Assembly (NCBI RefSeq): GCF_032062105.1
Contig: NW_026927584.1
Location: 124,001 to 188,000, forward strand
Source: Saccostrea cucullata
Lineage: Eukaryota
Length of the DNA stretch: 64,000 nt
Direction of reading: 5' to 3'
Part shown: one piece after another, positions 4,579 through 53,803 of the stretch
How positions within the stretch are numbered: position 1 is the stretch's first letter
How the letters are laid out: each line of letters starts with the position of its first letter
Made by a program: the position numbers and the translations under genes
The notes under the pieces: model-generated
Told to the model about the DNA's origin: nothing
The model's database searches: none
The model's input: only the letters and a program-made list of their open reading frames with translations

Positions 4579-6488
4579 TCACTGTTGTTCTCGACTCCTT
4601 GACTTAACATCTGATACTTTAATATTTTGAGTGTTCTTTGCCCCTGTTTTAGCTGGATTAGGAGATGCCATTCCTTGAGAAGATTTAGATTTGTCATCCC
4701 CCTCCTTCATTTGCTTATTCCCTGTGCTTTCTTGAGGAGACTGAGTATTTTTGTCCCCTTCCCTAATCTGCTTATTCTCTGTCCGTTCTCGAGGAGATTG
4801 AGGATTGTTGTCCTCTTCCTTTACTTGCACAGCTTTCCCTGGATGTGTCCCAGGTTTTCCACTAGGATCATTACCTCTGTTTTCCTTCTTTTCCTGTCCC
4901 TTGTCCCTTTTACACTGAACAATTCCTCTGACTAAAACAGGTCCATTTTCATGTAAGTAAACTGTAGGCCACACAGTATAATCTACAGTAGGACCATTAA
5001 CTGTGAATTTTCTGTGGACAGCATTATCAAAAGCAGAACCTGGCTTTACTTCAAAGTTAAAATACAAAGGCGGGGTCTGTATACATGCCCTCCAAAATAA
5101 TGACAAACAACTGCATATAAATCTTTTGACATTTTCATCTTTAAATTCAAGCACACAAGGCTCCTTTTTTTCTTTCTGGTAATCCTACAAAAAAAATAAT
5201 AAACAGGAAGGACATGAAAAGCAATAAATAAGTAAAGTTAATCTTGAGGCAATTTCTGATTATTTCTTGTATTTAACTCAGACTTTATCTTCCTTGTGTG
5301 CAAAAATCAATGTAGAAATATTTAGAGACATAAATGATATTTTTTATAAGTACAACAGAAACAGAATGTTGTAAAATACATGTATCTGTACCTCTTCAAG
5401 AAGTTGCTGTTCTTTCTCTAAGAGTGAAGTCCTTAATTCTTTGATGTGTTTCAACACACCTTTAGGTAAATCATCTTTTCTTACTTTTCCCTTCATGATA
5501 TAAATTAATTTCATAATTTGAGTTAAGCAATGCTAATTTATTATTTTATATTTATCAAGTGAATTAAACAAATGTACTATGAGAGGCTCTTACTTGATTA
5601 GATAAACCAAGAACTTCCATGATCTTCTCAAACTGTTTTTCTTCCCTATTTTTACAAAAGTTTAAACAGCTCTGAAAATAAAATCAAAATTCTTAAACTT
5701 AACATTTAAAGTTAAGACATCATCAAGGACTCATCTTAAACTCACTTGGATATATGGTTTCAATATAGGAATGGATAATTCATTCATTTAATTGACAATA
5801 CATTGTCGATATATCTAAACATCAAGTTGAAAGCTACATTAAGTCTTTTCTTCTTTTTTCAAGCTTAAGATTTAGTACTGAATTTTTGCCTATAGTAGCC
5901 TAGGAACTTATTACCTCATTAAAATTGACCCTCCTCCCATACAACTTAGTCATGAATTCATAGCCAAACACAACCATCTGTTGTTGTTTTTTTTTTTTTT
6001 ACTTTTAAGCACCAGATCATGTTATTTTTTTTTTATTAATCTGCTAAAATATGAAAATGTATGCTTCATTAAGAAATGCATTGTCCAGGAAGGGAATATT
6101 AAGCATTTTCTATTTTAATTAGATGCCAATAATTGTGTAAGTGGCTTTATTACATGTTTTAGATATTCATGAAGTTGGCTTTCCAGTATATGAAATCATT
6201 GTTCCTATACTGACATCACAGTAATACTGAATTAAAAATAACTAAGTTATGGCAATGCAAATCATACACCTACTTATACGCACCTCAGCAGTATTTAAAA
6301 TTTTGATGTGAATTTCTTTGGTTTTTTCCTCTCCCTCTGTCTCCTTCAGTTTCATTAACACCTCTGTATATTCATTGTCATATATTTCTGAAAACACCTC
6401 TCCAAGGTTAATTGGACGATTGAGGTCACTTAAATCAGCAATCCCAGGATTGTTTTCGGTCATGCGTACACCTGCTACTTGACTTAAC
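4579..6488 (-). CDS. G1: MIEAP/SPATA18-like domain protein (5' end unresolved)
   Basis: GT-AG exons 6284-6488 (RLSQVAGVRMTENNPGIADLSDLNRPINLGEVFSEIYDNEY..), 5594-5671 (SCLNFCK..), 5392-5490 and 4579-5184 (..CLSLFWRACIQTPPLY..GPTVDYTVWPTVYLHENGPVLVRGIVQ + tail). These splice in frame with no stops. Confidence 0.8.
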
Positions 6489-7487
6489 CTGAAATAATAC
6501 ATATAACTATAAACAAATGAATTGTTTTATACATGTATTTATGTTTGAATGGGATAAAATATCTGCATTAAACAAGTTTAAGGTATTCTTGGAAAAAAAA
6601 ACTGTGTATCTCTCATATAACATGACAGGTTAATCTTGATACAATTTTTTATTCATCAACTTTCATAAAAGTACATGTAGTGTGTTTATATAATATGCTA
6701 AGCATGTTTTTAAGTTGTCAACAAATCCTGTGTAAAATTGAAGAAAAACAGAAAGAAACTAATTGTAAATCATCTGAGGTGAATCAAAATTTGTATGTAC
6801 CAGGTTGGGGGGAAACGTAAATTCCGCTATAATAGTGGTATCTCACTATTATAGTGAAATTACACTATATTTCCTGCCGTAGACACCCTCAATTTCATCC
6901 GATACCATGCAAGGGGTTTGAACTGCAAGCCATGGTGGGTATTAAAATGATCAAAAACTGTCATGCTTGCATGTTTTGAATTTTAATAAATGTTCTACCG
7001 TTGCGTTTAATAATGCGAGCACTCTTTTTTTAACGGAAGTTGCATTTTTAACATAGCAACCAATGATTACAGGGTATTTAAGCCTGTTTGAATCTCATTT
7101 ATTCCTCATAAAAAGTCACGAATTGATGCTCGTTACAATTGTCAATCAGACTGGAAAGGGTTTATGGAATTAAACAAGAAAAAGGCTATTTCTGTCTGCA
7201 TGGAGGCCCGCTATGGTAAACGTAAAGACCCATTATTATCGGTCGCCGCTGCTGTGGCTGATCTTCCTGTGGTTGTGTTAGATAGTGCACATATGGGAAA
7301 TGAGAAGTTATTTTTGTAATAGTTCAGTAAAATAATTCTTCATTAATAACATGTAGAAAATCAAAAGTAAAATTTGCTTTAAACTTAATATTAATTGTTG
7401 TTATAATGTTTCAATATCATTGTCATTTCTCATCAAGATATTTGATAATTTTGACTATATAAAAAGAGTTTACAAAAGGTGCTATAT

Positions 7488-10737: not shown

Positions 10738-11010
10738 GTTAAAAATGCAACTTCCATTAAAAAAAGAGTGCTCGCATTATTAAACGCAACAGTAGCAAAT
10801 TTATTAAAATTCAAAACATGCAAGCATGACAGTTTTTGATCATTTTAATACCCACCATGGCTTGCAGTTCAAACCCCTTGCATGGTATCGGATAAAATTG
10901 AGGGTATCTACGGCAGGAGATATAGCGTAATTTCACTATAATAGTGAGATACTACTATTATAGTGGAATTTACGTTTCCCCCCAACCTGTGTACATGAAT
11001 ATTCTATCAA

Positions 11011-11015
<5 letters not shown>

Positions 11016-11057
<42 letters not shown>
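11016..11057. repeat. (CT)n microsatellite
   Basis: Read directly. Another (CT)n lies at ~11952-11978. Confidence 0.95.
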
Positions 11058-11061
<4 letters not shown>

Positions 11062-11947: not shown

Positions 11948-11982
<35 letters not shown>

Positions 11983-14585: not shown

Positions 14586-16142
14586 TCAACTGAAATTGAA
14601 TGTCCCGATTTCTGTCGGTTGTTGTCGAGAGTCGGAGGACCTTGTCTCCTTTAAGGCTGATTTCCTGTCTTCCAGTTCCTCAGGGGACACATCTAGAATG
14701 GCTGAAGGAGTCCTCTGCAATGTCGGTTCCTGCGAGGAGAGCCTTTGTAGCTTTAGGTTAAGGGATTCGTTTTTGTTAGTTGTTGCTACATTGTCTTGTT
14801 GTCGAGCTTCAGGGCTTTTAACTTCTTTTAACTCAGATTTCTTTATTTCAAGTTCCTTTGCAGAGAGACTGTACAAGAAAGGGGGCGTTTTGGTGATTAC
14901 AGAGTCTGCATTATCAGACTTATTACCATTTTTGATAGCATTTCCAATAACTATGTCTTTTGTTGGACCAATCTGAATTCTAGCAATATGCTTTCCATCA
15001 AAGTTATCCGCAGTAGTTGGGGTTGAGGTAACACTAGGAGAGTTGTTGTTGAGTTCAATAGTGGGGGATGAATCGCTTTTCCTAGAGATCATATTTCCGT
15101 TCTGTTGAGTCGTCTTCTGTTCGTTGCAGCCTTCAACAACAGCTTTGTTGAGAAGTGGGCCATTTTGTTCTATGTATAATGCTGGCCAGACAACATAATC
15201 TACAAACTTTCCACTATTTTTATACCCTCTGTGACATTCACTGTTGAACTCTGTAAAATCTGCACAAAGATACATTGGAGGCGTTTGAATGCAAGCATAC
15301 CAGCACACTTCCAGACACCGGTCTTGATAATTCTGCAGAGATGTAATCTCTTCTTTATTGGGAAATTTCTGTAAATTCAAGCACACATTTTTGAATCCTG
15401 CAATATCCTAATTACTAGCAAGTTCTTTTTTCTTTAATGTTAACATAAGTTTCTTTTTAAATAAAACTATGAGATACAGTACTCATTCATAGTTCTTGTC
15501 CAAAACTGTTTTATGATATTGAGGGCATGTATATCTCAAAAAGGTTGATATTTAAATCACATTTTTGTCGAATACCTTCATGAACAGGGAACTTACCCTT
15601 TTAATAGATGTCGCAAGTTCTGTAGCAACACTTTTGATGAACTCATTGAGCTTAGTCGAGGTAGTCTGAGACAATGTCGTCGTTGTGTCCGTCTAAAAGC
15701 AAAACTTTCTATTAAAAAATCATGATTGTGTTTTCTTATCCCTCAGTCATAGAAATGCAGAGAAAGAGAGAATTACCTCTATATCATCCAGGAACAACAG
15801 AGAAGCCGCCAGACGTTTCCCCTGCTTCTCTGATTCGCGTTTGCAAAATGCATAGCATTCCTGCAGTAAGACCAATTGAATAGTAAGCTATAAAATTTGA
15901 AAATTGTCTTTAAAGTTGAGACTGTTGATAGCAAAATAATATATACCATTATGATATCCAGTAACCGTTTTGTAATGACACAGTCGCTTCGTTCAATGTC
16001 AGTCTTGGCTTCCAAACTGAGGCGCTCAAACGCTTCCGTCCATTGGTTGTCGTAAATCTCGCTGAACATCTCTGACAACTTCTGTGGTCTTCTGGGATCG
16101 CTGAGATCCGTTATGGCGGAGTTACTCTCCATTAGCGTCAAA
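14586..16142 (-). CDS. G2: MIEAP/SPATA18-like domain protein with a long C-terminal tail (start possibly ATG 16132; ~395 aa)
   Basis: Exons 15947-16142 (..NSAITDLSDPRRPQKLSEMFSEIYDNQWTEAF..), 15777-15860 (ECYAFCK..), 15597-15692 and 14586-15407 (..CLEVCWYACIQTPPM..SGKFVDYVVWPALYIEQNGPLLNKAVVE..). All in frame. Confidence 0.8.
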
Positions 16143-16344
16143 CTGTTTTATTTCACTTGTGCTGAAATGAGTAAAGCTAGGGTAGGTACATGTATTGATT
16201 TTGAGAAATATTGAAAACTAATACCGCTTCTGCTACTAAATGCTCTCCTTCAGATGAAAATAATACTTTGAACTATGAAATAGTTTTTTTGTCTAAAACA
16301 GTAAATGATTTTGCTCGTTTTATTTTCTTTTATTTCCTCGTAGT

Positions 16345-18730: not shown

Positions 18731-21700
18731 TTAATTGCTATGCGGTTGGACAACGCCTTTCTTTAAAAGCGGACCACCCTCGTGTAATAGTAACGACGGC
18801 CATACATTAAAAGACACAGTTTTTCCTTTCCCACTGTACAGTCTTAAATGCTCAGACACTCTCTGTCCTTCATGGGCCCAAAGTAAACACATAGGCGGAT
18901 CCTGAATATTGAAAAGCCAGGACAATTGTATGCACAGGTTGGAGTATTTCATTAAATTGTCTGTGTGTAAATCAGGGTCAATCATTTTGGACAACTGCTT
19001 CCGTGTGAACAGCTGCAATGAATAAAAGTTTCAAAAATGACAAATATTAAAAATAAAAGTGTAAACTTTTCAACTTTTAAAAATTTCCTCTTAACTTACC
19101 ATTTGTATTGAATGAATACTGAGCACACCGTGATCTTTCCTGAATTCTTTCAAACATCTTGAGGCTTCTTTTTGTAATTTTTTACTCACATTTAGCTACG
19201 AATAAATAAGAATCAAATTATCTTGAACTTGTATAATTTTAAGTGAAAAATTTTGATTGTGAAATTTTTATTAGCGAAATACATGTAAACATGAAATATG
19301 TATACGTACCTCATATTTTATTTTCAAATTTTAATAAGAATAAATTTTCAAGGATTCTTTTATCAAAGTTAGAAACACATTTTTTAATCCCTCACCCACT
19401 CTGGTACATTCCTCATGGGGAACAGAATCTTCTCCCACATTTCCTGGAACTGGTCCGAGGCCAGAGTCTTACAGTACTGGAATGCTGCCTGTAAAACAAA
19501 ACATAGATTCAAATTTAATATATAGAATATAATTCTATGAAATTTATAATTCCTTTATGCTATAGCCAAAACGTAGAGAGCACGGAGATATTTGAAATAA
19601 AACTTCTGGGGTGATAATAAAAAGAACGTCTAGAATTTGGGTTCTCTCCTTGTTTTTCTTAAAATGGAGAGCGATCTAGTCTAGCATTTTTTTGCAAATG
19701 TAATGGAATATAGTTGAAACACGGGGCTAGGTTAGCAAGAAGACTCTACGTGTAATAAGCATTTAATTAAATTATAATATTGGCACACGAAGTTTATAAG
19801 CTGCCTTTTAAGTCTTTAGAAATGATATTATTTTACCTCTAAAATGTCTGCCAAAAGTTTGATATTCCCATCCTCGTGATTCTCTTTGGTCATGCGTAGT
19901 TCCTCTAGAACCATTGTCCACTCGTTGTCGTAAAGTTCCGAGAATCGCTCGGCGAGATTTGTAGGTCTGTTTGTGTCGCCGAGATTTGAAACTGTCGAAT
20001 CTTGATCTTTATCTCTGTGCTTTTCTTCCTCCAATTTACTTAATCTGTGAAAATTCGATGCAACGTTAACTTAATCTATATGCATCTCTTAGAAACAAAG
20101 ATGTAGAAATATGCTCTCAATGTATCCAAAATAGTTTTAGAATATGATTCTTTTTGTGACTATAGTAATAATTGGCTTCAGGTGCCGTACACGAAATGCA
20201 TGTACATGTGTAGTTTTAGCAAAGCAAATGGAGTTTTGCTGAAAATGTGTACACGCATTCCTGTGTTATAATAAATGCCATTGGTATCTATCTTAATTTT
20301 TAGGCACGTTTCATGTTTATTCAAATGATATAAATACTACCTAATTTTTAATTCTTCGATTTCTTTTTGCTGTGATTCTATAAGACTTGGCTGGTTCTCA
20401 TGTCGGGCTGTCTCAGCTGGTTTCTCGTCCTCACTGACGTATCTCTCGGTGTTCACTTCGTCCGTCTCTTCCTGTTTCTCTATCACAAAGGTTTTGGAGG
20501 CTCGAGTCAGACTGTCTAACTCTGTTGGTACATCCATAAGATCGTGTATTCCAGTGAATTTCTTACTCTCAACTGTTCTCTGGAAAGAAGGAATACTTGT
20601 AACTTTTTTAATGACATTTACGTAGTGCAAGATTTTATGTCTTTACTAGAAGATTATTGTATATAAAATAAATTGAAAGAGAGAAAGGTCTGATTATTAA
20701 TCAGACCTTTCTCTCTTTCAATATTATTTTTATTCTCTGACTCAAATATAAATGCAATCACTTTTGATATTTGAAAGACATGATAATAAAGGACAATGGC
20801 TAAAAATATTGGGAAGACATGAGGTAACCAATAACCTGCTTGTGCACTCTGTACACGAGTGTATCATACTATCATATTATCATTCATGCCCAAAGTTCAA
20901 AGAGGGAACACGTTCAAAATTATATGAAATGAGATGAATGTTTACAAGACTTAACAAAACTTGGTTGAAAATTTTACTGCATTATATCTGAGGTAAAGAA
21001 TGTCCTTCGAAATTCAACGAGAAGTTTTGGTGGAAGGGATTACTCTGGAAAATTTTTAAATGTTTCACTTAGCAGTGACTTGTCTAAGAATTCAAAACGA
21101 TAGTGTTTGACTTAATATATGTAGAAACTTAACAATGATGATTGACTTACAGGAACTTGTAACTTGTCTAAAAATGAACATGATCGTGATTGACTTACAG
21201 GAACGGGTCTGTATCCTTTCTTCAGAGCTTTCATCAGAGTTGTGTAGTCTATCTGGGCGTCCACCAGAACCATCTCTAGTTTGTCCCAGTCCTTCTCCTC
21301 TGCTGCTTTAAGGGCCGTCCGGAGGGACTCTACCTACATTGTCATTATTTTATAAAGAAATCTGTGATTTACTCACATTAATGTTACAAATGTGATATAT
21401 TCTCTTGTTTTTAAATAATCCAGCTGTGTGTATTGGTCACAGGTTTCATTTTTCAAAGAAAAAAAAAATCAAACATATCAACTTAAGAATCTTAAACTGC
21501 ATTTTTTATACGTAGATTAGACTCTTAGTAATATGCTTTCATCTCCTTTATACTTTTATATTCAGTTTTCATACCTGTTATAGCCTTTTCTGTTCAAATT
21601 CAAGCTTACAGATTCATAATTGAATCCCAGTAATTAATTAGAATCGGATATAGAACATGAAATAATGTAATTTATCAATCTATATTGACCTACATTATCA

Positions 21701-21840
21701 GCCTGGGCCCCCACCACTCCTTTCATCAGGTTATTGAGATCCGCCCTGGCGTTCTGAATCATTTCCCGCGTTAGGAGGTGGTACTTCTTCTGGGCCACGA
21801 GCCCGACCACGCCCTGTAGCACCTTACCGAGCCCCGACAT
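18731..21840 (-). CDS. G3: MIEAP/SPATA18-like domain protein, 7 exons, ~399 aa
   Basis: Exons 21694-21840, 21199-21333, 20341-20579, 19837-20044 (RLSK..NLGDTNRPTNLAERFSELYDNEW), 19396-19488 (AAFQYCK), 19100-19195 and 18731-19012 (CIQLSWLFNIQDPPM..VWPSLLLHEGGPLLKKGVVQ). Total 1200 nt, ATG to TAA, no internal stops. Confidence 0.85.
20672..20722. repeat. 51-bp palindrome (25+1+25) in a G3 intron
   Basis: attgaaagagagaaaggtctgatta-t-taatcagacctttctctctttcaat. Confidence 0.9.
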
Positions 21841-23810: not shown

Positions 23811-26800
23811 TCACTTTTGCGTCGCTATAACAGATCCTTTTGACAAAACCTTTCCACCTTCTTGCATTAAAACTGCTGGCCATACGCACATGGATACGTA
23901 CTTCCCACTCTCTGAATAAAACTCGTATTTGTCCCTTTCGACTCTGTCTCCCTCTGACGGCCAAACAAGAGCCATGGGCGGATCTTGGACGCACATTAAC
24001 CATAATATTTCTATACATTTGTCTATATAGTCATTGAGCACACTAGGTAGTTTTGTATGGTCCCAACGAAAATCCTTCTCTATTGTTGTTTCTTTGAATT
24101 TCTACAAATGTAAATTTATAACATGATTACACAGGCACCTGACGTTACTTATTTTTCTTTAATAAAAAATATACACATACCTAATAATAAACAGTTTATC
24201 ATTAGGTATATGTATATATTTTTTTTATTAAAGAAAAATAAGTACCACCAGGTGCCTGTGCATAACTAGTATTGAAAATAAAATCATAAAGACGTTGTTT
24301 AATTCTTTCCCGAAAAAGCAAATACTTGGATATGTGGTTACACAAACTACCTCGAAGATGTTTCAGATTACTTATAAGAAGTCATACGTTTCGTGTAGAT
24401 TTTATTCGAGTTATCTACCTTGCAGAGCTGCGGTACAGACATTGTGGCCACCTCCTGACGTAACCCTTTGACGTATTTCATCCCTTTTGATGACAACATT
24501 AGTCTCTGCTCCCGTGTGGGGGAACTTTCCTGAGAAGAATAATTCATTTCATAGTATTTTATCATTGTCAAATCTGTTATCATATGTGATATCATACAAC
24601 AAACAGCTGAATTATTAAAGTGACAATTTTGGAACTGTCAGATGTTGGAAAAAGATTTTCAATTATAAAGGACCTTTGGCAATAATCTTAAATTTTTATA
24701 TCGAAGTAAAAATTCTGATTGGGAAAATGAATACTTTTGAAGAGTATACAATTTGTTTCTCACAAGGTAAGGAAGTTTGATTGGTTGTAGTAAAGGCACT
24801 GCAGATGTCGTGGTTAAATCCAAAAGCTGTCCGTAGGCGGCAGTTTGGCAGAATGGATATGCATACTAAAAAAAGAGCAAATATCAAAATTCACCGAAAG
24901 AGTTGCAATTGTTACCCTCTCGATTGGATCACAAAATATTTATACATTCAGAAATTGGAAATAAGAGCGCGTCAGAGATACATTTCCGGACAACAATTAA
25001 TACTAGTATATTAAATGGTATTCGAAAAAGGATCGCCAACGTGCTCTTATTTCCAATTTCTGAATTTATCGTTGCACCTAAAATGCATCTGATGACATGG
25101 TTACATAAACATGTACAGATTTATCACAATACTTTTGAATAAAATTGGAGATAACTAACAGTAATCGAGCTCAAAGTCCGTTAAAACAATACAATTTAGG
25201 AACAGAGCAAACATGAACCTCTGAAGCTATCAGAGGTAGGATCAGGTGCCATGGAGTAGTGAGTATCCTCGGTCGACCGGTCAAGTCTGTCTTGTGCTCC
25301 TTGTTATAATCAGGCATGCGAAAAAAAATATATAGACAATACAGTGTGTAAATAATGGCTAAATAATAAAACTAAGTTTGAAAAACGTAAAGTCAGCATT
25401 CGACTTAAAAAGAAGTCAGAAGATAGACTGTACATATTTGCTGATAATGCCATTGTATCGACCATAGAACTTGCAAATTGTTGCCTATGACTGGGACTAA
25501 TGATGTTCATTTACGAGTATCATCAACTTGTTTGTCAAAAGTCTCGTTTTAGAAACTGGATCTAACTCAATGTTTCAAGATAAAGATGAAAGATGTATAC
25601 CTTAGAGATATTCATTATTCCTCAACACAGAACAACTTCTGATTAATACCGTATTCGTGTCCTGCTTTCCTGTATTCTAGATCTCTATACACTGTACCTA
25701 CATGTATAACGTGCATGCTATTTACCCGTACTATCCTCATGAGGTTATACATGATTTCTGTGTCTTTGCCTTGATTCCATGTACTCATCTCATGAAATGC
25801 TCTTGCGTATTCCTTGTCTCGGAAGTCTCTGAATCGTTTGGTGATTTTGAGGGCTTTACTGAGTGCAGTATCATCCTCCTCTATCCCGCCTCCCAGTCTA
25901 AAAATAGTCAAATAACATGTGAATTCACTGAACTTTAAAGAAAAGCATTTTAGGTAAAATTAAAAAATGCAGCCTGGGTAAAACTTCTTTAATTTTTAAT
26001 ATAGCACAAATAATACAGCAAAAATTCAAAAGAATTCAAGTGTAAGAAATATATTTTTAGATATTGGGCACTCTACTTTCAACAATTGTCTACTGTGTTA
26101 CATAATATTATTAAAGCATTTTATCTTAAAATACTCCTGGCACTGTGGAAAACTCGCTCTTCTTGTAATTAAGGTCAGACGACACGTTCCTAAAAATATA
26201 TAATTTTTCCGAAGAATTTGTCATTGAAGAAAAGGGACTTAAACAAGATTCCTCACAAAGAAGTAGGGTACCTTACCAGGCATATGGACAAGATACCACT
26301 GGAAAATATTTCTTATATAACCCTTTTGGGTAATCTTCTGAATGGCCTATATCATCATTTTTGGTGTACTTATACTTAAAAACAGTTTGAAAACAATGTA
26401 GAAATCAGAAAAGAATGACGAATATGAATATTTTTTTTTATATAATACCAAGAGATACAAAACATATAAGTATTTGAGATATGTGTCATCTGACCTTAAG
26501 AGGGCAATGGGTAGTGGTGATGGCCATTTTCGGACTATTTAAACCTCATGGAAATTAGGAGCTTTGTATAATCTGATAGTAATATTGCATATTACAGTTG
26601 TATTTTCAAAAAAAAATATTTATTGCCAAAATATGGTATTCAAAATACTTAGATGGATCATTTTGGCGATTTTTGACCACCCTTTTAACCTCTTTATTGA
26701 ATCCTTGAGTGGAGTAATTGTCCTTCTCTTGTGTTTCCAGAAACCCCGTTTTCAATAACAAGCCTGGGATAAAGTATTTTAAAGGTGGAACTGATCATAT

Positions 26801-36057: not shown

Positions 36058-36107
<50 letters not shown>

Positions 36108-36534: not shown

Positions 36535-39500
36535 TTAAAATGGCTCCACTACACCTTTAGACAACAAAGGACCATTTTCATATAACTGCAATATAGGCCA
36601 TACAGTAAAGTGGACAATCTTTCCATGTTTTGAGTGTTCCTTCATATTGTCGTTTATTTTAAACCCTTCTTCGGGCCACACAAGTTTCATAGGCGGATCC
36701 TGAATAGAAAATAACCAGCATATTCGAACACAGCTCTCAACATAGTTAATTATTTCTTTAGATTTATCCCATCCTGTTTCTGCAAATGCACCACCGTGTG
36801 TATACCAAAAGATCTAAAATAAAATTTAAGAAAAGGAATCTAAAATTGTAATATTTGATAATTACCGCACATGTTTGGACAATTATCATGAATGCAAATA
36901 AATTTGAGTAACAGTGTAGTCAGTTTGTTCTATCAAAACTAAACATATTTACCTCCTGAACAGCTGGTACGGCGTACAAACCCGTCTCCTGTTGTATCTG
37001 ATGGACTCTAGGCTGCAGTTTCTGTTCTGTGGTGTGGTTTACTCTAGCCTACGAAATATAACAGGGGTTTAAAACATAATGGAAGAAAAGATTATTCATA
37101 AATTATTGTTTTAAAGAGGCTGTCATACAGTGCAGACATGTAGTGACGTTTTTGAACAGGGGGTACCAATCAGGAAAAATTTTGACGCCCTACTTGCAAT
37201 AGCTTCGACAAGCAAATGAAAATCGGAATTTGGAGAAATCTTATTCATGAATAATTTAAATGCACATATTTTCAGAATAATCTGCAGGAGGAATCTGGTC
37301 TGAGATCGCCTTTTAATCGAATATTCTTTTCCAACCAGAGTTATGTCGTTACATGTTTTCCTATCGCCGACTGCATCATCTCTGGGGAAATCGTCTACAT
37401 TCATAAACTTCTTAAGGAAAATACTTTAAAAATGGTTACACTGTATACTATTTAGACAATTTACCCCTTTCAAGAAGTCAAAAATGAGACAAAAACGCTC
37501 ACTTTAAAAATATGTATTTACTGTTTCTTTTTATTTTACTCACTTTCAAGGTCACTTACATTTGCTATTGCTGGTAATCCTAAGGGGTAAACTAGAGCCT
37601 CCGTTATTTTCCCTCTGTGTTTTCTGGCTTCTTCTCGACATAATTCATACGCCATCTGTATCAAAATTCAAAGTGGTTTAGTAACCAAATTCAGAGCAGA
37701 TGTACTTTTATGTACATTTTTATGCCATCCCCTTTTTTTTTATCAAACACCCTCGCCTTAAATTTTAAAGCTCTACTATCTATTTCATTAAGCTTACTTC
37801 TAACATTTTGCCCAATCTTCTAATGATTTCCTCTTCGTTCCTTATTTGACCCATGCCTTTTAATGCTTTAAAAGCAATGGTCCACTCCCTGTGATAAAGA
37901 TCTCTGAAGTACTCAGCTATTTTCTCTGGTGTATTCAGGTCGCTCAGCTCTATTTTAGGCCGATGGTGGTCTCTCCGTTTTTGGTCACCAACCATGGAAA
38001 AACTGAAATAGAATGCAATAATAAGACGGTCTCAATTATTTAATTGATAAAGAAAAATGTTATGGTTATGTGCAAGGGTATACACGCACTTTCTAAAGAA
38101 CTCAATCCTAGATCTTTTTTATTCATTGATCATTTCATCTTTTTGAACAATATAGGTGGTGTCATTTAGTCTGACTTAAAAATTTCATTCTCATCCTTGA
38201 GACCTAATGGAAATTGGAAAGGGCCTTTTTTTTTAACTAAAGCATGGTCTCAGAACTCCTGTAATATTTCACACAGTAGCTAAGAATGATGCGTGGTTTG
38301 CACGGCGGCTTCAGAAATTATTTCACATACTTATTAAACACAATTCTCTGAATCTCCCTCTTTTAATATCAGATTTTACATCATGAAATATGAAGACAAC
38401 GAACATTAATCAAGTTAAAAGTTAATTATTGGAATTAATTTCATGGACATACAGTAATGTGAATTTATTTTGTGCTCAACTTGATAGTTTATAATATTAT
38501 ACTTTTATGTAAATTAGTTGAATCTGATTGGTCGACAAACATATCTTAAAAAGCACTATTACCCGCTGAACAATGAAGTCACGCCCTCCAGCGTAGCAAC
38601 AGTCAACATTGCTTGACGAATGGTTCTATTCCAAAAATTAGCGACTGCGCAGAATTAATGCGCGCACGGTTCATTCTTATATGTATTTGCATAAAACATT
38701 CAGTATAATGTAATAAATATAGCATATTTTATGGAAATCATAGAATATACGTATTTTGTGGCTTCCTCACAACCCAATATTTATATAGGTACTTCAACTC
38801 AGCTACATGCATAAGTGAGCTAGTTTAGAGGCTAACACGCGCAGGTAGTATTTTTCTATAATAGCATCCAGTTTTAGATTCTTTTAACCCAAGAAAAGTT
38901 CCAAGTATTGCATACATGTACCTTGTTTCACGATCTTCACTTGTGTTCAAATACTCTGAATTGGTAGACCCTGCAGGGGAATTCTTTAAAGGAAAAAAAA
39001 TAAAAACCATAAAAGAATTATAAATAGTGTGATATTTCTACTTACTGAAATACTAGTAAACGTATTTAAGATATGTTATAGAATCGCTTTAAAATACATG
39101 TATATTCACAATACTTTGAAGTTTTGTGATGTTTTATATATTTTTGGATATGTGTATTTGATAGACTCTTGCCTGTACTTACACTGAATACAAACTCTGG
39201 AACAACCGATTGCCTTTGGAGGTAGTTTTGGTACTCTTTTAGAAGATTATGGAATTTTTCTTCGCCGTCTGCCTTGTACTTTAATATTTCTTGTAAATGT
39301 CTAGACTGAGCAGCATTCAAAAGCCTCATTATATCTCTCTGTAATTTGAAAAAAAAAACTTTATGTTGTACACTACATGTTTAAAAAAATTTCTATTTGA
39401 AATGTAACAATATGAATTTATCTAAGATTACTAGCATTATGTAAACAAATAACTTGAAATCAAATTAAAGGCAAATAAAATGAAACAAGGCATAAATGAA

Positions 39501-39762
39501 ACAAAATGATTGGTATAATAAATATTTTCAAACATTAATTGAATAAATTAACTTCTGAGAAAATCATAATTTATGTTCATATAAGATTCACTTCCTTTTT
39601 ACTTACCTGTGTGTCTGGGATCAGCATGGGCAGCGTCTGACATATAGCGTTAAGTTCTCTAATGGCTATTTCTACATCTGAAGTACTGAAGTCGCTCTCG
39701 TAATATTTACATTGATGCAGTTTATCAAAAACTTTCTTCAAATACGCGTATTTGTCAGACAT
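36535..39762 (-). CDS. G5: MIEAP/SPATA18-like domain protein, 7 exons, ~349 aa
   Basis: Exons 39607-39762, 39183-39338, 38922-38983, 37798-38002 (ELSDLNTPEKIAEYFRDLYHREW), 37560-37655 (MAYELC), 36953-37048 and 36535-36813 (CVRICWLFSIQDPPM..HGKIVHFTVWPILQLYENGPLLSKGVVE; this exon is absent from the ORF track). Total 1050 nt, in frame. Confidence 0.85.
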
Positions 39763-41827: not shown

Positions 41828-44800
41828 TCAGACTGGTTGGACGACACCTTTGGACATCAGAGGACCATTTCTATGTAAATATAATGTTGGCCACACGACG
41901 TAACTGATTACAGTTCCCCGTTTGGTAAATTCTTTGACATCCTCATCAATTTTACTCTGTTCTTTTGGCCACCATAACTGCATAGCAGGATCTTGAATGG
42001 CAAATAGCCAGCAAATTTGTACACAGCTTTTGATGTAAGTCATTATTTCCCGTGATTCGTCCCAGTCGTTCATTTTAATTTCTTTTTCATGGTGTTGCTG
42101 AAACATCTGAAAATCAAAAATGAAATGATTTTTTTTTAATCATAAAGGAGAATTGTACAGGTAATGTGAGCACTAAGCTCACTAAATGATACCTCCGCCT
42201 AACATATGATTATAGTTACAAAGTCCATGTTTTGCTCTGGGTGACCCTGACTAAGTGTCAGATCTAAAAGTAAAATAAGAGGTGCATAATGGCATTATCA
42301 TGTAATAAAGAATCTATCAAAGTATCATCAAATTTTATGTGATTTAGGATGAGTGGCGGAGAGATTTAAGAGATGGGTACCCTTTTCAATATTATAGAAA
42401 GAATGACAGTGTCCATGTTGTGCTATGGGAAACCCACAATATGTGTCCGACCCACAAGTAAAATAGGAGGCGCACAATGGCACTATGTACAATGTACATG
42501 TAACAAAGATACTTTGAAAGTTTCATTAAATTTCATTCAGTGATATGAGAGGAGTTGCGGATAAGAGGTGGGTACCCCAAAGCGTAACAGACGGACATGC
42601 AGACGTCCAGACATCCCGATCACTATATACCCTCCCAGTTTTCAAGCAGGAGAGGGTGGTTATATTTACATATCATTTCTGAAAAATTAAAAAACTAAAT
42701 TTACTTTTACCAATTAAAATCTTTTTATAATGTGTATACCTCCTGTATGGCAGGGATGGCGTAGACGCCCGTTTCTCTTTGTATCTGACGGACTTTGGGG
42801 CGCAGTTTTTCCTCAACATTTGGCTCTACACTGGCCTACAATATTGGAAGAGATGTGTATATGGAATCTCTTAACCATTGATCATAATGGCTTTATCATT
42901 GACAATGCAATTTTTGACTCGAATATGCACATGAGAATCATATTTCTTTTACTGAATGTTCATATTGCACTGCTCTTACATTTAGTGTTAGATGAATTCC
43001 AACGGGATATACTAATGTTTCTCGGATTTTTTCTCTGTGTTTTCTTGCTTCTTCAAGGCAAAACTCATAAGCCATCTGTAGCAAAAAAAAATTGAATTAA
43101 TATTCAAAAATATCCCATTGTTAGCCAAGTATTCAAAAGAGTGCATGTTATCATAACACGAAAAATAATTCCACTCTATAATTATATAAATACACTAAAA
43201 AATGGTAGTTTTTTCTGGATCTTATCCAAGTGCGCTCTTAAGAACACCGTATCTGGCCTTTCCCCCTTCTCTTAATGATTCTGAATCCTTCAATATTTTG
43301 AATTCTTAGGTTTTACATCTAATCTTATGGTATCATAATTCGTGATCTGTAATATTTATTTATCATAAATATATTATATATCTGACTGACCTTTAACATT
43401 TTACCAAGTTTCTTGACAATATCTTCTTCGTTTCTAAGCTGCCATTTTTTGTGTAGTACGTCATAAGCATTGGTCCACTCGTTGTCGTAAAGTTCCTTAA
43501 AGTACTCCGCTAGTTTAGTTGGTCTGTTAATATCACTGAGGTCCGCTATAGAGGGATTGTTGCTTCTCAGTTTCTCCCCAGCAACCTTGCTTAATCTGTT
43601 AATATAATAATTCTATAGGTTTTCGCTTCGTTCCTCAAGTGAAAACGGGTCAAAACAGACAGGTCAAAATCAATAGTTTTCTTTCAAAATAGTCATAATT
43701 TTTCAAATTTTAGCCCATCTGAACTGAGGGCTCAAGTGAGTTTTTCTTGAGCATATTTTTTCTGGCATCCGTTCGTCAGTCCATTCAAGTTCGTTAAATA
43801 AAAGAATCATGCCTCAAAGGGCACTGAACAATAAAGTTAAATCATTCAGATAAAAATTAGCAAAAATTTCACTCCATATGCAACTTTTACAAACCCTCTT
43901 TTCATGAACCCGGGATTGAGGTGGGACCAAAATGGCCGATCAAAGTTCAACATATTAGTAAATAAATCTTCTAATGAACAGCTTAGCCTTGATTAATCAC
44001 ATGTGTACTTATACGGAAGCATTCTCAAGTAGTGTAGATTCAACTTAATTCAAATTATCCCCTCAGGGGCAGGGTGAAGCCCTTTTCAAAGTTTTACATA
44101 GAAAGATAAATATGGAAAATTGGAAATACATGTATCATACAAAAACTCAGGAACAGCAAAGACAGGAAAAATCATATTGATGTGGATGAAAGTTATGTAG
44201 TTTCAAGTCTGTTCAAATCATGACCCCTAGGTATAGGGCAAAAATATCATTATCAAAGTTTTTGCCTTGTTGTAAATTTTGAATTTACCGGGTGGCAGTA
44301 AAAACAAAATTTACATTGCCATCTGGTAGTACAATTTTTATCCTTGGACTTTAAGTAACTTAAGGCGTGGTATTTTCGACGTAACATAATCAGTGTATGA
44401 AATTTACACAGCCTTTCATTTACTGTTGAAATATACATGGGAAAGCAATACGTCTCAGTAATGAAACGCTGTCATTGGATCATTGCTACACTAGTTGACA
44501 TTCGCCCGAATTTCTATTCCATGTATATTTCAACAGTGAACGAAAGGCTGTGTAAAGAGATGGGGCTTAATGTTATGAATTTCTTAACCCATGATAATTT
44601 GAGAGACGTTAATTATGTAGCTTCGAGAATGCCATGTCTCACTGAAAGTCCAAGGTTGACAAAGAATTGTACTAAATTTAAAATTTATAACATGACATGT
44701 TTCATATTAGGAATAAATAGGAAAAATCTTTAAAAACCTTTCACTTAGGAGCCATTGGGCCGGAAGAATTACCTGTTTTTAAGTTCATTAATTTCCATGT

Positions 44801-45537
44801 CCTTACGAGCCATTTCGTTACTAGTTTTTGAAGTCATTGATTTTGCAGATCCTTTATGTTCCGGATTTGGTCCAATTTCTGAGGGTTTGGCACTTCCTCT
44901 ATGTGAACCCTGTGTGTAAGAAACTCGGGTGTTATTCAATTTATACCTGACACAGCACTTAAATTATATACCTGTTATAGTACTTTGATTTACTAGTACT
45001 ATTATTGGAATGTTAATGTTAAAACTACAACAGGTATAAATACAAAATTGTTTAGCAATTATATTCTGTTAAACAAAAGTGAATTTTGTTATCTGAAAAT
45101 GAAATTCGCTTCGCTTTTATTTTATTTACTCACGTGCACACTTCCATTTGAGGGTCTGGCTCTTGATTCCAAAGACTGTTCAAAATCTTTTACAACCGTT
45201 AAATATCTGGGCATGATTTCATGTTGCTTCTTAAACCTAATTAATTCTTGTGGTTTTCTTGATTCTGCCAAATCAAGAAATTTGAGCAAATCTACCTGAA
45301 AAGAAAACCATCGACTTGAATATCATTGTGTATATGTATAAAACTAATTTCTAGTACTTTTATACTATATTTAATTCTTACCTGAACAAAGGCAGGTACA
45401 GTCGTCAGGGCCTGACATATGGCCGCCAATTCTCTCTTTGCGTACTCTACATCAGAATTGCTGAAATCATTTTCGTAATATTGTCTGTTTTCTATGCATT
45501 CCACAACTTTTTTCAAATGACGATATCCGTCACCCAT
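41828..45537 (-). CDS. G6: MIEAP/SPATA18-like domain protein, 7 exons, ~376 aa
   Basis: Exons 45382-45537, 45134-45295, 44773-44909, 43391-43595 (RLSKVAGEKLRSNNPSIADLSDINRPTKLAEYFKELYDNEW), 42980-43075 (MAYEFC), 42740-42835 and 41828-42106 (CVQICWLFAIQDPAM..VVWPTLYLHRNGPLMSKGVVQ). Total 1131 nt, in frame. Confidence 0.87.
43708..44240 (-). mobile_element. HINE-like fragment (reverse) in a G6 intron
   Basis: Terminal hairpin 'tttagcccatctgaactgagggctcaagtgag', a ccgttcgtc tract and 'ttcaaatcatgacccc' satellite-type subunits. Confidence 0.5.
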
Positions 45538-47789: not shown

Positions 47790-50700
47790 CTAAACTTTCC
47801 GTTCAAAGGGATAAACGTATCCTTTGCTAACGATTGGTCCTCTATTGTGTAAAAATAAAACAGGCCATACCGATACTTTAACAATGCTACCATTAGTTTT
47901 ATATAACTTGTAATAGTCTTTATTAATTGCCTCCCCTTCTGTAGCCCACGTGATCACCATAGGCGGATCCTGTATGCACATTAACCACGTGATCTCTATA
48001 CAGGCGTCAATGTAAGCTAGGATTGGTTTTGGAAGTTGGCGTGGCTCCAGCTGAAAGTTCTGTCTCAGAATTTGTTTTTTGAAGACCTAAGTAAAATTAT
48101 ACTAGGATATCTTACTTTGATTTCACTGGATATCAATTTATATTGCAGTTGCTTATAGGCAATAAGAAATACTAGGTTAACTAAAGGCTGGTGAATTTAT
48201 TTTGATGCTTAGTACACTATCATTTAAAGAGTGCAGACCAAAAATTACCTCCTGTAACTCTGGAACAGATTTGACACCTGCTGCCTTTCTGAATTCTTTA
48301 GAATGTCTGTTACAAACTGATCGCAGCAGTTTTCCTTGACTTTCGTCAAGACGCACATCTACTGAACCAATTGACGAAGAAAAATTGGTCTAAAATGTAA
48401 TTGTAACATATATACTAAACATTTTTCAGTCAAATATTATTTTCAGAGAAAAATAAATGCACTTTTCTTAGAAATGTAAATGATTTACTGTTCACAAGGA
48501 AATTACTTTGCTTACCGAATCGGACATAGAATGTCCATGGAAAGACGAGGGATGTAGAATGTGTTTCTCCATTGACAGCGACAAGTTAGACAATTGAGTT
48601 TCAGAGGACTTTTTGCAGAAGTCATATGCATACTGAAATATTTTCAATCAGAAACTAATTTTCTTTTGAAATTCATATAAAATATTCGTAAAATTTAAGC
48701 TATGTGAACAATTTTAAAAATAGGAAAACTGCTCTTATCATTTAACTAATTACATGTAAAGAAAAATATTCAAAAAATATATCTTAGATTCTAGATCTAT
48801 GAAACATTTCCTTTTCGGTCTGTAGAGGAATGTATACAGAGTGGATATGTTTCTGTCGTACTACCTACTCTGAGTATTCTCAGTAGAACTCTCAGACAAT
48901 TAATTCTCCTCAGTGTACTTAAGCTGAGTGTGGTTTAGTTCCTGATATATTACCTACCCTGAGTATCCTCAGTAGAACTCTCAGACACTCCTCCTCTGTG
49001 TACTTGAGCTGAGTCTGGTTTAGTTCCTGATATATTACCTACCCTGAGTATTCTCAGTAGAACTCTCAGACAGTCCTCCTCATTGTACTTGAGCTGAGTG
49101 TGGAAGGCGTCATACGCATCAGACCATTCCTCATCATATAGGCTTCCCAACTTCTCCCCGATTTTTGTCGGTCTGTTCTTGTCACTCAAGTCCGCCATGT
49201 TAGGATTACCAGCTAGCAACTGTTTGCTTGCAAAACTGCTTAATCTGTAAAACATTCTTTTGCACTGTACTGGTAATCAAATTAATCATTATGGAAAAAA
49301 CGGCCTTCCAACATCTCTGCCTTTGGTTTGTGTCAAATCTTATTATCTTTAACATTCATTTTACAAATTGACCTGTAAATAATATAATTCTGTGATTGGT
49401 TCCTTCTCGCCCATGCAGACACTAGCGTGCAGCACGTTTACACATACCTGGTTGTGAGTTCCTCTATCTGCATTTCTTGCTGTTTAATTCTTTTGTGAAG
49501 ACGATCGTACTCTTCTTTTGAAATGAAGATGGACCCTGAGCTATGCTGACTATTGTAAGCCTGAGAAGAAGGAGGTCTGGAAGCAGAGATGAGGCTTCTA
49601 TTTAAATGATTACTAGCATCTTTGGTTGACCCTCTTTTAATGCTGGAATTGAAGTCAGGTTTGTTCGCCGAAGTATTGTCGGCCTTGTATAGAGGTTTAG
49701 TTGTGGTGTATTCTGGGTTTATGGCTTTCATTGGTCCATCTTTATGTGGGGTGTGGTGGTGGTGGTGTGAAGTTGGTGTTTGTGGTTTACGTTTAGCAAG
49801 AAGAGATCCACCCAGGTTTTGTTTTATTTGTGGTTCTCTTGGAGAGCCATCGGGCTGAAGTTTTAAAAAATTAAAAAGAGAAAAATGATTATTAATCTGT
49901 CAATTAAAATATACAAAAAGATCTTTAGTTTCTGTCATTCATTTTGAAATATCCATTTTTTATGACTCACAGAGAGTTTCTTTATTTCCTCACAAGCTCT
50001 TGCAGATCGTTGTAAGGCGTTCAATTCTCTCAGAGCATCATTAGAAAGGCTTTTGACAGAGGTTTCTTCAGTTGATCTCTGTATGATATAATACAGTTTT
50101 GGTCCGTACATTTGATCGACGTGAGAAGACGCTCTTGGCTGACATTCGGAAGTTTTCTGAAACTAAACATCTGCATTTAACTTAACTATTATCCAACATT
50201 AAATTATTTAAATTACTTATCCTAAAAAAAATTGCTGCCCGGTAACTCATGAATGTCAGAAAATGCACATTGTAGGTCAGATCAAGAGTCCTAAGAAAGT
50301 CTGCTATTACATATATGCTCCTTACGTGTATAATTTCTATATAAGCAGTTTGGTCTAAATTAGAACACACATATCGATTTTACTTTGAAATTGTTGATCT
50401 CATAACTTAGACTAGGAAGCCGACAACGGGTTTTTTTTATTTAAAAAAAAAAAAAACTACATTTAATTATTGAGTACTGAAATGTGGATTAAATTGTTCC
50501 TAGATGTTTATTTTTTTAAGTGAACTAATTGTTATTATTATACTTTCATGTTAAATACTAAAATCTGATTGGCTTAGATGCAGTTAACAATCCGTTCGAT
50601 TACCCTGAGCCTTAGCAACACACGTGGCAACGGGTAACACAACGGTAATGCCAAATGCGTGGAAATTATGCGCGTACGGTTCAAATGATTACTCAAAACG

Positions 50701-53700: not shown

Positions 53701-53803
53701 CGCAAGTTAAAAATTTTATTTAATTCAATTACGAGACAACAGAGATGAAAATGTTTACGTTAGTGATTTTATTCTACTTTCGGTTTCACTTACCTTCAGC
53801 CAT
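47790..53803 (-). CDS. G7: MIEAP/SPATA18-like domain protein, 8 exons, ~534 aa
   Basis: Exons 53794-53803 (ATG GCT GAA G), 53237-53481, 49971-50156, 49448-49854, 49043-49244 (RLSSFASKQLLAGNPNMADLSDKNRPTKIGEKLGSLYDEEW), 48516-48632 (YAYDFCK), 48249-48389 and 47790-48086 (CIEITWLMCIQDPPM..VWPVLFLHNRGPIVSKGYV). Total 1605 nt, in frame. Exon 53237-53481 aligns with G4 exon 1. Confidence 0.82.
48863..49103. repeat. Tandem triplication (85-89 bp) of a G7 exon 3' end plus its splice donor
   Basis: Three copies of 'acctac(c/t)ctgagta(t/c)tctcagtagaactctcagaca..gtactt(g/a)agctgagt(g/c)tgg'. Confidence 0.9.
50536..51250. mobile_element. Crypton-like non-autonomous repeat; related fragment at ~38497-38720
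   Basis: Both begin 'ttatactt..atgt..aaatctgattgg..attaccc..tagcaac..atgcgcg(t/c)acggttca'. The superfamily is recalled from similar oyster repeats, not verified. Confidence 0.4.

What the first reader, a model, noticed from the sequence alone, without database searches (positions are those of the whole stretch)
4579..53803. Array of seven co-oriented, highly diverged MIEAP/SPATA18-domain genes: a possible diversifying gene system
Seen: seven minus-strand genes share a four-exon core with identical intron phases (a phase-2 intron before the core at R|LS, then three phase-0 introns) and the motifs DLSD.NRP, ELYD.EW, Y.FC, W...iQ.PPM and VWP.L....Gp.l.KG.V. Outside these motifs they are very divergent and carry different N- or C-terminal extensions. 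G3-G7 are intact. Established: in mammals this domain occurs in the single p53-inducible mitochondrial quality-control gene SPATA18/Mieap. Inference: an old tandem expansion with a constant core and variable appendages suggests a specialised family of adaptors or sensors (stress, immunity, or germ-line/mitochondrial turnover) rather than simple dosage.
Basis: partly seen in the sequence, partly recalled or inferred. Interest (0 to 1): 0.8.

Follow-up and report, generated by a model that had tools for sequence, protein, structure and literature searches.

The report
Tandem oyster MIEAP-domain gene array
Seven neighbouring, intact and conserved copies of a "mitochondria-eating protein" (MIEAP/SPATA18-like) gene lie in this hooded-oyster region; they are real, but they belong to a bivalve-wide expansion of about 50 copies per genome that is already published, and they evolve under purifying selection, not diversifying selection.

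Summary
Seven minus-strand genes each carry a four-exon MIEAP (PF16026) core. Each last core exon alone scores 43-58 bits (cut-off 27). Intron positions and phases are the same in all seven.

The window is Saccostrea cucullata. G1 and G2 are RefSeq models (320 and 382 aa). RNA reads show GT-AG junctions for G2 (2 of its 3 introns) and G3 (3 exactly; the e3/e4 joint aligns 3 nt off). An eighth copy lies just left of the window.

The array is old:
- Order and orientation G4-G3-G2-G1 are kept in S. echinata, and G3-G2(-G1) in Ostrea edulis.
- The paralogues are 30-57% identical.

It is not diversifying. dN/dS against S. echinata is 0.06-0.24. No signalling or recognition domain occurs in any extension.

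The genome holds about 52 distinct copies, many in similar arrays. Regan et al. 2021 already reported a Mieap orthogroup of 53 genes per bivalve against 0.6 elsewhere.

The most likely function, by inference, is that of Mieap-like scaffolds: a helical or coiled-coil N-half plus a lipid- or membrane-binding MIEAP domain, acting in mitochondrial quality control and specialised by tissue or stress.

One side lead is untested by sequence. The MIEAP fold resembles the plant DUF641/GIL1-IRKI (COST1) domain at TM 0.62-0.66.

The parts
4582..6488 (-). G1 = RefSeq LOC134274869 (320 aa). CDS exons 6284-6463 (ATG at 6463; the frame stays open up to a phase-2 acceptor at 6488), 5594-5671, 5392-5490 and 4582-5184. 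The MIEAP domain is followed by a K/E/Q-rich tail of about 110 aa holding a 57-bp repeat.
   Evidence: (P0162 matches the exon models at 92-100%). The e1 dN/dS against S. echinata is 0.11.
14589..16132 (-). G2 = RefSeq LOC134274857 (382 aa). Exons 15947-16132 (ATG), 15777-15860, 15597-15692 and 14589-15368. The MIEAP domain sits at the N-terminus, followed by a tail of about 180 aa with conserved motifs.
   Evidence: 83.9 bits, profile 1-193/195. RNA joints at 15368/15597 and 15859/15946; the e2/e3 intron has no read. Omega 0.24. Tail conservation is shown.
18734..21840 (-). G3, about 399 aa. Exons A 21694-21840 (ATG), B 21199-21333, C 20341-20579 (coiled coil, phase-2 donor), e1 19837-20044, e2 19396-19488, e3 19100-19195 and e4 18734-19012.
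   Evidence: A 1364-nt transcript contig and raw reads span the introns between C, e1, e2 and e3; the e3/e4 joint was read as 19009/19100 with 3 letters between, so 19012 comes from the AG acceptor. Exons A and B are 93-94% identical to the S. echinata 397-aa gene and 76-78% to O. edulis. Omega 0.10.
23814..25897 (-). G4 core. Exons e1 25726-25897 (degenerate N-terminal motifs), e2 24800-24865, e3 24419-24529 and e4 23814-24101. Candidate upstream exons lie in ORFs 26697-27017 (phase-2 donor at 26827), 27356-27610 and 28876-29211.
   Evidence: (58.5 bits). Exons e3 and e4 are 95-97% identical to S. echinata, omega 0.06. The upstream exons are inferred only.
36538..39762 (-). G5. Exons A 39607-39762 (ATG), B 39196-39338 (phase-2 donor), e1 37798-38002, e2 37560-37655, e3 36953-37048 and e4 36538-36813.
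   Evidence: It is colinear with the 355-aa mRNA-derived protein P0135.
41831..45537 (-). G6. Exons A 45382-45537 (ATG), B within 45104-45298, C ending at 44773 (phase-2 donor), e1 43391-43595, e2 42980-43075, e3 42740-42835 and e4 41831-42106.
   Evidence: It is 63-84% identical, exon by exon, to P0135, which comes from a 1698-nt transcript contig of another run.
47793..49899 (-). G7. Coiled-coil/IDR exon within 49441-49899 (phase-2 donor at 49448), then e1 49043-49244, e2 48516-48632, e3 48249-48389 and e4 47793-48086. Possible further 5' exons lie at 49938-50162 and 53219-53524.
   Evidence: (54.9 bits). An 85-bp tandem repeat at 48862-49103 triplicates the e1 donor region. The 5' exons are inferred only.

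Best explanation
The region is part of a tandem array of separately transcribed, intact genes of the bivalve-expanded MIEAP (SPATA18/Mieap-like) family in Saccostrea cucullata. Seven genes lie in the window and an eighth lies just outside it. The window genes are not the SPATA18 orthologue, which lies elsewhere. They are old paralogues that each have their own conserved orthologue in other oysters.

Each gene encodes a soluble protein with a C-terminal or sole MIEAP domain, predicted as a bundle of 4-5 helices followed by a small six-stranded beta subdomain. There are two architectures:
- G3-G7 carry a conserved helical N-terminal part plus a coiled-coil or disordered linker, the same plan as human Mieap.
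- G1 and G2 start just before the domain and carry a low-complexity C-terminal tail with conserved short motifs.

Inferred mechanism: like human Mieap, the structured MIEAP domain binds membrane lipid (cardiolipin-type), and the coiled-coil or disordered half drives self-association and client recruitment. The proteins would then organise condensate-like compartments for mitochondrial or organelle quality control. The many paralogues would be retained by subfunctionalisation by tissue (for example ciliated gill), stress or client, not by an arms race.
For: Shown:
- Family membership and shared exon/intron plan.
- Species and RefSeq models.
- Transcription and splicing of G2 and G3, and a G6-like mRNA in another run.
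- Conserved synteny in S. echinata and O. edulis.
- Purifying selection, omega 0.06-0.24 at dS 0.33-0.45. G3 against a transcript contig gives pN/pS of about 0.2. G6 against P0135 gives pN 0.20 against a saturated pS of 0.91.
- About 52 distinct copies genome-wide, often in co-oriented arrays such as C19497:632-679 kb.
- Canonical SPATA18-like loci are distinct: Pfam 88-97 bits, long branches.
- A confident fold model, pLDDT 92.3 and pTM 0.88, matching the Atlas MIEAP cluster at TM 0.86.

From the literature:
- Human Mieap has a hydrophilic coiled-coil/IDR N-half and a hydrophobic structured C-half. The C-half targets it to cardiolipin-containing mitochondrial condensates (PMC10845071).
- Bivalve Mieap orthogroup OG24 has 53.1 genes per species (PMC8382680).
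- MIEAP-domain genes are over-represented among gill-specific transcripts of a mussel (PMC5549309).
- A MIEAP protein changes abundance under cadmium in Dreissena (PMC11036304).
Against: - No localisation, lipid-binding or condensate data exist for any bivalve paralogue. The mechanism is carried over from one human protein that is only about 20-30% identical.
- G1 and G2 lack the N-terminal half that human Mieap needs for multi-phase droplets.
- Expression was checked for G2 and G3 only, and depth was low.
- The 5' exons of G4 and G7 are inferred.
- Gene-average omega cannot exclude positive selection at a few sites.
Confidence: 0.6

Rival explanations
1. One reading: a diversifying family of immune or stress adaptors or sensors, with a constant core and variable recognition or signalling appendages that evolve in an arms race.
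For: Large lineage-specific tandem expansions are typical of bivalve immune families (PMC8382680). An oyster nidovirus encodes a MIEAP homologue, which could hint at host-virus interplay (PMC11848433). The paralogues are very divergent outside the motifs.
Against: Omega is 0.06-0.24 between orthologues. Order and orientation are conserved across Saccostrea and into Ostrea. No TIR, Death, CARD, LRR, lectin or any other Pfam domain is found in the extensions or in long relatives. The N-terminal exons of G3 are 93-94% conserved.
Confidence: 0.1
2. The MIEAP domain is the animal counterpart of the plant DUF641/GIL1-IRKI_C domain (COST1, RTA9). On this view the proteins are membrane-associated regulators that bind and modulate partners such as dynamin-like GTPases or ATG8 in autophagy and organelle shaping, and are not cardiolipin condensate scaffolds.
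For: The Atlas fold search gives plant PF24994/PF04859 clusters at TM 0.62-0.66 by query, with 160-171 residues aligned at rmsd about 3.5. The feature search with PF16026 excluded returns GIL1_IRKI_C as its top three hits. COST1 is a membrane-enriched autophagy regulator without a transmembrane segment, and its authors ask for animal counterparts (PMC13189119). Maize RTA9 is a mitochondrial DUF641 protein that affects ROS (PMC12697904).
Against: The feature scores of 0.77-0.78 are below the tool's trust line of 0.9. hmmscan at E<=10 gave P0001:1-204 no family but MIEAP; for the other 67 members only the 25 most-matched of 132 families were shown, and GIL1_IRKI_C was not among them. No profile-profile test could be run. 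A shared fold does not show a shared function.
Confidence: 0.15
3. The proteins are GrpE-like co-chaperones. The helical hairpin plus beta subdomain would act on the co-expanded bivalve HSP70/HSPA12 proteins.
Confidence: 0.05
4. The array consists of decaying duplicates, that is pseudogenes or neutral copies, with no individual function.
For: G4 has lost the N-terminal motifs. Expression of G2 and G3 is low in the runs read.
Against: All 28 core exons are open with GT-AG sites. Omega is far below 1, including 0.06 for G4. Orthologues are retained in three oyster genera.
Confidence: 0.02

Closest known systems
Human/vertebrate SPATA18 (Mieap), Pfam PF16026
   Same: The MIEAP domain is the same: full-length match for G2 and colinear exon matches for all seven genes. 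G3-G7 share the overall plan of a helical/coiled-coil/disordered N-half followed by the structured domain near the C-terminus.
   Different: The window genes are not the orthologue. Canonical loci (C18862 with haplotig copies, and C15967) score 88-97 bits in Pfam against 41-56 for the window exons in the same search, and sit on long separate branches. The family has about 52 copies here against one in mammals. G1 and G2 lack the N-half and have C-terminal tails. p53 control, mitochondrial localisation and cardiolipin binding are untested.
Bivalve Mieap orthogroup OG24 (Regan et al. 2021, PMC8382680)
   Same: It is the same family and the same phenomenon: a bivalve-wide expansion of 53.1 genes per species with duplications in the bivalve ancestor. 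The window array is one local instance.
   Different: That paper gives counts and a stress-related interpretation only. It reports no locus anatomy, synteny, selection estimates, architecture classes or fold model, which are provided here.
Plant DUF641 / GIL1_IRKI_C proteins (COST1, GIL1, RTA9)
   Same: The predicted fold is similar over nearly the whole domain (TM 0.62-0.66). Both are soluble proteins that associate with membranes or organelles, with links to autophagy, mitochondria and stress.
   Different: No detectable sequence similarity was found with hmmscan, and homology is unproven. The plant partners (RHD3, ATG8e, S40) have no shown counterpart here.
GrpE nucleotide-exchange factors
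   Same: The arrangement is the same: long helices or a helical bundle followed by a small beta domain. GrpE is the top PDB match by two aligners.

Membership tests
MIEAP domain family (Pfam PF16026) | Match to the Pfam HMM above the gathering score of 27 bits | tested here: met
   The last core exon alone scores 43.5-58.5 bits in all seven genes. The whole G2 protein scores 83.9 bits, E 2e-23.
MIEAP domain family (Pfam PF16026) | Complete domain, colinear over the whole profile | tested here: met
   G2 covers profile positions 1-193 of 195. In all seven genes exons e1-e4 map to positions 1-62, 63-88, 91-122 and 127-214 of a 215-position family HMM. G4 e1 is weak at 9 bits.
MIEAP domain family (Pfam PF16026) | Shared fold with other family members | tested here: met
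   The AF2 model has pLDDT 92.3 and matches the Atlas cluster 'Mitochondria-eating protein domain-containing' at TM 0.86 over 193 residues.
SPATA18/Mieap orthologue (single-copy gene) | Being the closest copy in the genome to canonical SPATA18 | tested here: not met
   Other loci (C9193/C9491/C18862 and C15967) score 88-97 bits in Pfam against 41-56 for the window copies. They score lowest against the bivalve-expansion profile and sit on long separate branches.
SPATA18/Mieap orthologue (single-copy gene) | p53-inducible expression, mitochondrial condensates and cardiolipin association | not testable with these tools
   These properties are known only for the human protein (PMC10845071).
Diversifying (arms-race) multigene family | Elevated dN/dS between orthologues | tested here: not met
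   NG86 omega is 0.11 (G1 e1), 0.24 (G2), 0.10 (G3) and 0.06 (G4 e3-e4) against S. echinata. Site-specific tests were not run.
Diversifying (arms-race) multigene family | Rapid gene turnover or loss of synteny between related species | tested here: not met
   The order and orientation G4-G3-G2-G1 are kept in S. echinata, and G3-G2-(G1) in O. edulis. G5-G7 were not tested.
Modular adaptor/sensor proteins | Known signalling or recognition domains in the variable extensions | tested here: not met
   No Pfam family at E<=0.1 appears in ten upstream exons or in the G2 tail. Six relatives of 1105-2606 aa show MIEAP only at E<=1e-4.
Plant DUF641 / GIL1_IRKI_C (PF04859, PF24994) | Homology shown by sequence profile | tested here: inconclusive
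   The fold matches at TM 0.62-0.66 and the feature search gives it as the top three hits at 0.77-0.78. hmmscan at E<=10 gave P0001:1-204 no family but MIEAP, and GIL1_IRKI_C is not among the 25 families shown of 132 for the 68 members.

The most novel reading that the evidence does not exclude
The MIEAP domain is not metazoan-specific. It would be the animal member of a pan-eukaryotic fold that includes the plant DUF641/GIL1-IRKI_C domain (COST1, RTA9) and unnamed ciliate and Mucoromycota proteins. The roughly 50-copy bivalve radiation, including this array, would then be a set of COST1-like, membrane-associated regulators of organelle fusion, autophagy and ROS. Each would be tuned to a different partner through its N- or C-terminal extension. 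This would give the animal counterpart that the COST1 authors asked for.
Probability: 0.25. Interest if true: 0.6.

Novelty: new member of a known kind. Interest (0 to 1): 0.3.

Why it matters
As it stands, this is ordinary for a bivalve genome. It is one local array of a published, RefSeq-annotated family expansion. Its value is descriptive: it shows that these copies are old, syntenic, individually constrained genes in two architecture classes. That argues for subfunctionalisation and against an arms race.

The biochemical role of about 50 Mieap-like proteins per bivalve remains unknown. It may bear on how sessile intertidal animals manage mitochondria under hypoxia, heat and metal stress.

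The fold-level link to plant DUF641/COST1, if confirmed, would connect two families now described as lineage-specific. It would also suggest testable partners.

Tried and rejected
- Signalling domains. Pfam scans of ten upstream exons, the G2 tail and six long relatives found none. The modular-adaptor idea is rejected.
- Beta-thymosin/WH2-like reading. The two conserved G2 tail motifs (..ELE.KKS.LKE..) gave no Pfam hit. This is dropped to a passing note.
- Solved structures. The sequence-profile search gave nothing below E 0.04. Foldseek against the PDB gave nothing at E<=0.001. BFVD viral structures gave nothing.
- GrpE similarity. It is consistent but weak, with no sequence support.
- Monophyly of the array. 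The tree on 81 columns is largely star-like. Only G3+G5+G6 (98/88) and, weakly, G7 with the outside eighth copy are grouped, so no claim is made on the duplication order.
- Exact look-up of P0001. It was not on record.
- Earlier scan notes. None exist for this place or for these words.
- An upstream coiled-coil exon for G1, like the one in its S. echinata orthologue. Only a weak candidate was found at 10996-11112 (E 0.004). This is unresolved.
- Steps left out. Whole spliced models of G3-G7 were not joined and searched as proteins. Full-length searches used only the database proteins P0001, P0162 and P0135.
- Reads.
Full report
**What is there**

The window has 32-35% G+C and no N runs. Its reading frames are short and interrupted, as expected for an intron-rich animal genome.

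Each of the seven last core exons, given by reference, matches Pfam MIEAP (PF16026) at 43.5-58.5 bits against a gathering score of 27.

The G2 last exon is 99% identical to RefSeq 'uncharacterized protein LOC134274857 [Saccostrea cucullata]' (P0001, 382 aa). G1 is LOC134274869 (P0162, 320 aa). tblastn of both proteins reproduces my exon models. As a whole protein, G2 scores 83.9 bits over profile positions 1-193 of 195.

**Gene anatomy**

From open frames, GT..AG sites and the paralogue alignment, I derived four core exons for each gene. Searched exon by exon against a family HMM, the exons map to the same profile segments in all seven genes. Exon e1 covers 1-62, e2 63-88, e3 about 91-122 and e4 about 127-214.

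Three phase-0 introns separate the core exons. In G1 and G3-G7, e1 is entered through a phase-2 acceptor. In G3, G4, G6 and G7 the preceding exon is a coiled-coil exon that ends in a phase-2 donor (..EL..|R). G5 has a shorter equivalent.

Public oligo-dT RNA reads and a metatranscriptome contig, all 95-99% identical and so from another population or sister lineage, show junctions on the minus strand:
- G2: 15368/15597 and 15859/15946, both GT-AG. The e2/e3 intron has no read.
- G3: 19195/19396, 19487/19836 and 20044/20341, all GT-AG.
- G3 e3/e4: read as 19009/19100 with 3 letters between the sides. I place the boundary at 19012, where an AG acceptor lies, so this junction is supported but not exact.
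- One 1364-nt contig spans five G3 exons and runs on into an upstream exon.

The extensions fall into two classes.
- G1 and G2 begin at a Met just before the DLSD motif. They carry tails of about 110 and 180 aa. The G2 tail contains motifs conserved from Saccostrea to Ostrea and Crassostrea-like sequences.
- G3-G7 have multi-exon helical N-terminal parts. The first two G3 exons are 93-94% identical to S. echinata and 76-78% to O. edulis. G5 and G6 are colinear with a 355-aa protein (P0135) that comes from a 1698-nt transcript contig.

None of ten upstream exons has a Pfam family at E<=0.1, and the G2 tail has none either. Six long relatives of 1105-2606 aa show MIEAP only.

**Family context**

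The same genome (1.17 Gb) gives 80 exon-level MIEAP matches. I fetched 65 last-exon loci. Adding the window's seven and collapsing copies at 95% or more identity, which are probably haplotigs, leaves 52 distinct copies. Several sit in other co-oriented arrays, for example C19497:632-679 kb.

An eighth copy lies on the + strand about 0.9 kb left of the window.

The loci that score best in Pfam (C18862 with two near-identical contigs, and C15967; 88-97 bits) score worst against a profile of the bivalve expansion. They also lie on long branches, so they are the canonical SPATA18-like genes.

The tree of last exons is mostly unresolved. Only G3+G5+G6 (98/88) are firmly grouped, and G7 groups with the outside copy and two other contigs at 86/87. 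Window paralogues share at most 57% identity in that exon.

A profile search of 1.84 billion cluster representatives finds 2196 clusters at E<=0.001.

The expansion is published. Regan et al. 2021 list a Mieap orthogroup of 807 genes, 53.1 per bivalve against 0.6 in other taxa, with duplications in the bivalve ancestor (PMC8382680).

**Age and selection**

In S. echinata (JAVQLB010000056.1), four co-oriented MIEAP genes flank the G2 orthologue. tblastn shows that they are the orthologues of G4, G3, G2 and G1, in that order. In O. edulis (OX387705.1) the G3 and G2 orthologues are adjacent, followed by a 326-aa MIEAP gene.

Nei-Gojobori estimates against S. echinata, computed exon by exon and pooled, are:

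| Gene | Codons | omega |
|---|---|---|
| G1 e1 | 60 | 0.11 |
| G2 | 378 | 0.24 |
| G3 | 302 | 0.10 |
| G4 e3-e4 | 133 | 0.06 |

dS is 0.33-0.45 in the multi-exon sets (0.74 for the single G1 exon).

Two further comparisons agree. A count on 35 listed differences between G3 and the transcript contig gives pN/pS of about 0.2. G6 against P0135 gives pN 0.20 with a saturated pS of 0.91.

So the copies are old, individually conserved genes. There is no sign of gene-wide diversifying selection or of decay.

**Fold**

An AlphaFold2 model of the G2 domain, built with a 68-sequence alignment, is confident (pLDDT 92.3, pTM 0.88). It shows helices at 16-41, 50-83, 99-123 and 131-148, then six short strands at 155-203.

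- No PDB sequence relative exists.
- Foldseek finds nothing at E<=0.001. GrpE is the weak top hit.
- BFVD viral structures gave nothing.
- In the ESM Atlas the model matches its own family at TM 0.86. It then matches unnamed ciliate and Mucoromycota clusters at TM 0.69-0.71, and plant GIL1_IRKI_C/DUF641 clusters at TM 0.62-0.65.
- The Atlas's own model repeats this. A language-model feature search with PF16026 left out returns GIL1_IRKI_C as its top three hits, at 0.77-0.78, which is lead level only.
- hmmscan at E<=10 gave P0001:1-204 no family but MIEAP. For the other 67 members only the top 25 of 132 families were listed, and GIL1_IRKI_C was not among them.
- No paper in the library holds both SPATA18 and COST1.

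**How it most likely works**

Shown: these are expressed (G2, G3), spliced, constrained MIEAP-family genes.

Inferred: they act like human Mieap. In the human protein the structured hydrophobic C-half concentrates it in cardiolipin-containing mitochondrial condensates. The coiled-coil/IDR N-half recruits clients (PMC10845071).

G3-G7 have that bipartite plan. G1 and G2 are domain-plus-tail variants.

Reports from other bivalves fit a mitochondrial or stress role that has been partitioned among paralogues, but they do not prove it:
- Gill-enriched expression in a mussel (PMC5549309).
- Cadmium-responsive abundance in Dreissena (PMC11036304).

Rival readings are scored in the report sections. 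They are an immune sensor family, a COST1-like regulator, a GrpE-like co-chaperone and pseudogenes. An oyster nidovirus encoding a MIEAP homologue (PMC11848433) keeps a small probability for an antiviral connection.

**Verdict**

It is not supported on 'diversifying', and 'adaptors or sensors' finds no support.

This is one more locus of a known, published bivalve expansion, so interest is modest (0.3). The most novel surviving idea is the fold-level link between MIEAP and plant DUF641/COST1, which needs a profile-profile test.

**Limits**

- Reads were laid on 14700-20699 only.
- The 5' exons of G4 and G7, and a possible upstream exon of G1, are inferred.
- Spliced models of G3-G7 were searched exon by exon only.
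- Synteny and selection were not tested for G5-G7 against a genome of a sister species.

Noticed in passing
AF2 model of P0001:1-204 (G2, window 14589-16132): The MIEAP domain model matches ESM-Atlas clusters of plant GIL1_IRKI_C/DUF641 (TM 0.62-0.66), and unnamed ciliate and Mucoromycota clusters (TM 0.69-0.71). A feature search that leaves out PF16026 also returns GIL1_IRKI_C first. This is a possible remote homology between two families now described as lineage-specific.
   Followed up: partly
window 7541-8013 and 8043-8503: Two arrays of a 21-bp satellite, about 22 copies each, lie in inverted orientation relative to each other. They form a palindrome of about 1 kb, roughly 1 kb upstream of the G1 start.
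   Followed up: no
window 48862-49103: An 85-bp tandem repeat (2.8 copies, 89% matches) triplicates the 3' end of G7 core exon 1 together with its donor site (..LRVLLRILR|GT). This gives two extra potential donors in intron 1.
   Followed up: no
window 14589-15120 (G2 tail); alignment A1: The G2 C-terminal tail is not free-drifting low complexity. Two related motifs (..SAKELEIKKSELKE.. and ..SPEELEDRKSALKET..) and the C-terminal ..RQQP.EIG.FNF. are conserved from Saccostrea to Ostrea and Crassostrea-like sequences. Omega for the tail is 0.25. No Pfam hit was found.
   Followed up: partly
G000:C9721:122926-123141 (+), about 0.9 kb left of window position 1: This is an eighth MIEAP last exon on the opposite strand, convergent with G1. 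In the tree it groups with G7 (86/87).
   Followed up: partly
window 30670-32970 and 42135-42650: Repeated elements are shared, in both orientations, between the G4-G5 intergenic region and intron 3 of G6 (tblastx 50-80%). They are probably MITE- or TE-like fragments.
   Followed up: no
window 16718-16748 and 17398-17957: RNA reads and contigs cover short stretches upstream of G2. There is a joint 17429/17569, and a few reads link 16133 to about 17367. These may be a 5' UTR exon of G2 or a separate transcript.
   Followed up: no
window 2614-3233, 9981-10657, 58575-58850, 62688-63188: Further tandem repeats with periods of 170, 150, 135 and 138 bp lie in the flanks of the array.
   Followed up: no
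Literature (PMC11848433): A 64-kb nidovirus from Crassostrea gigas is reported to encode a MIEAP homologue, which would be a host-derived gene of this expanded family in a virus.
   Followed up: no
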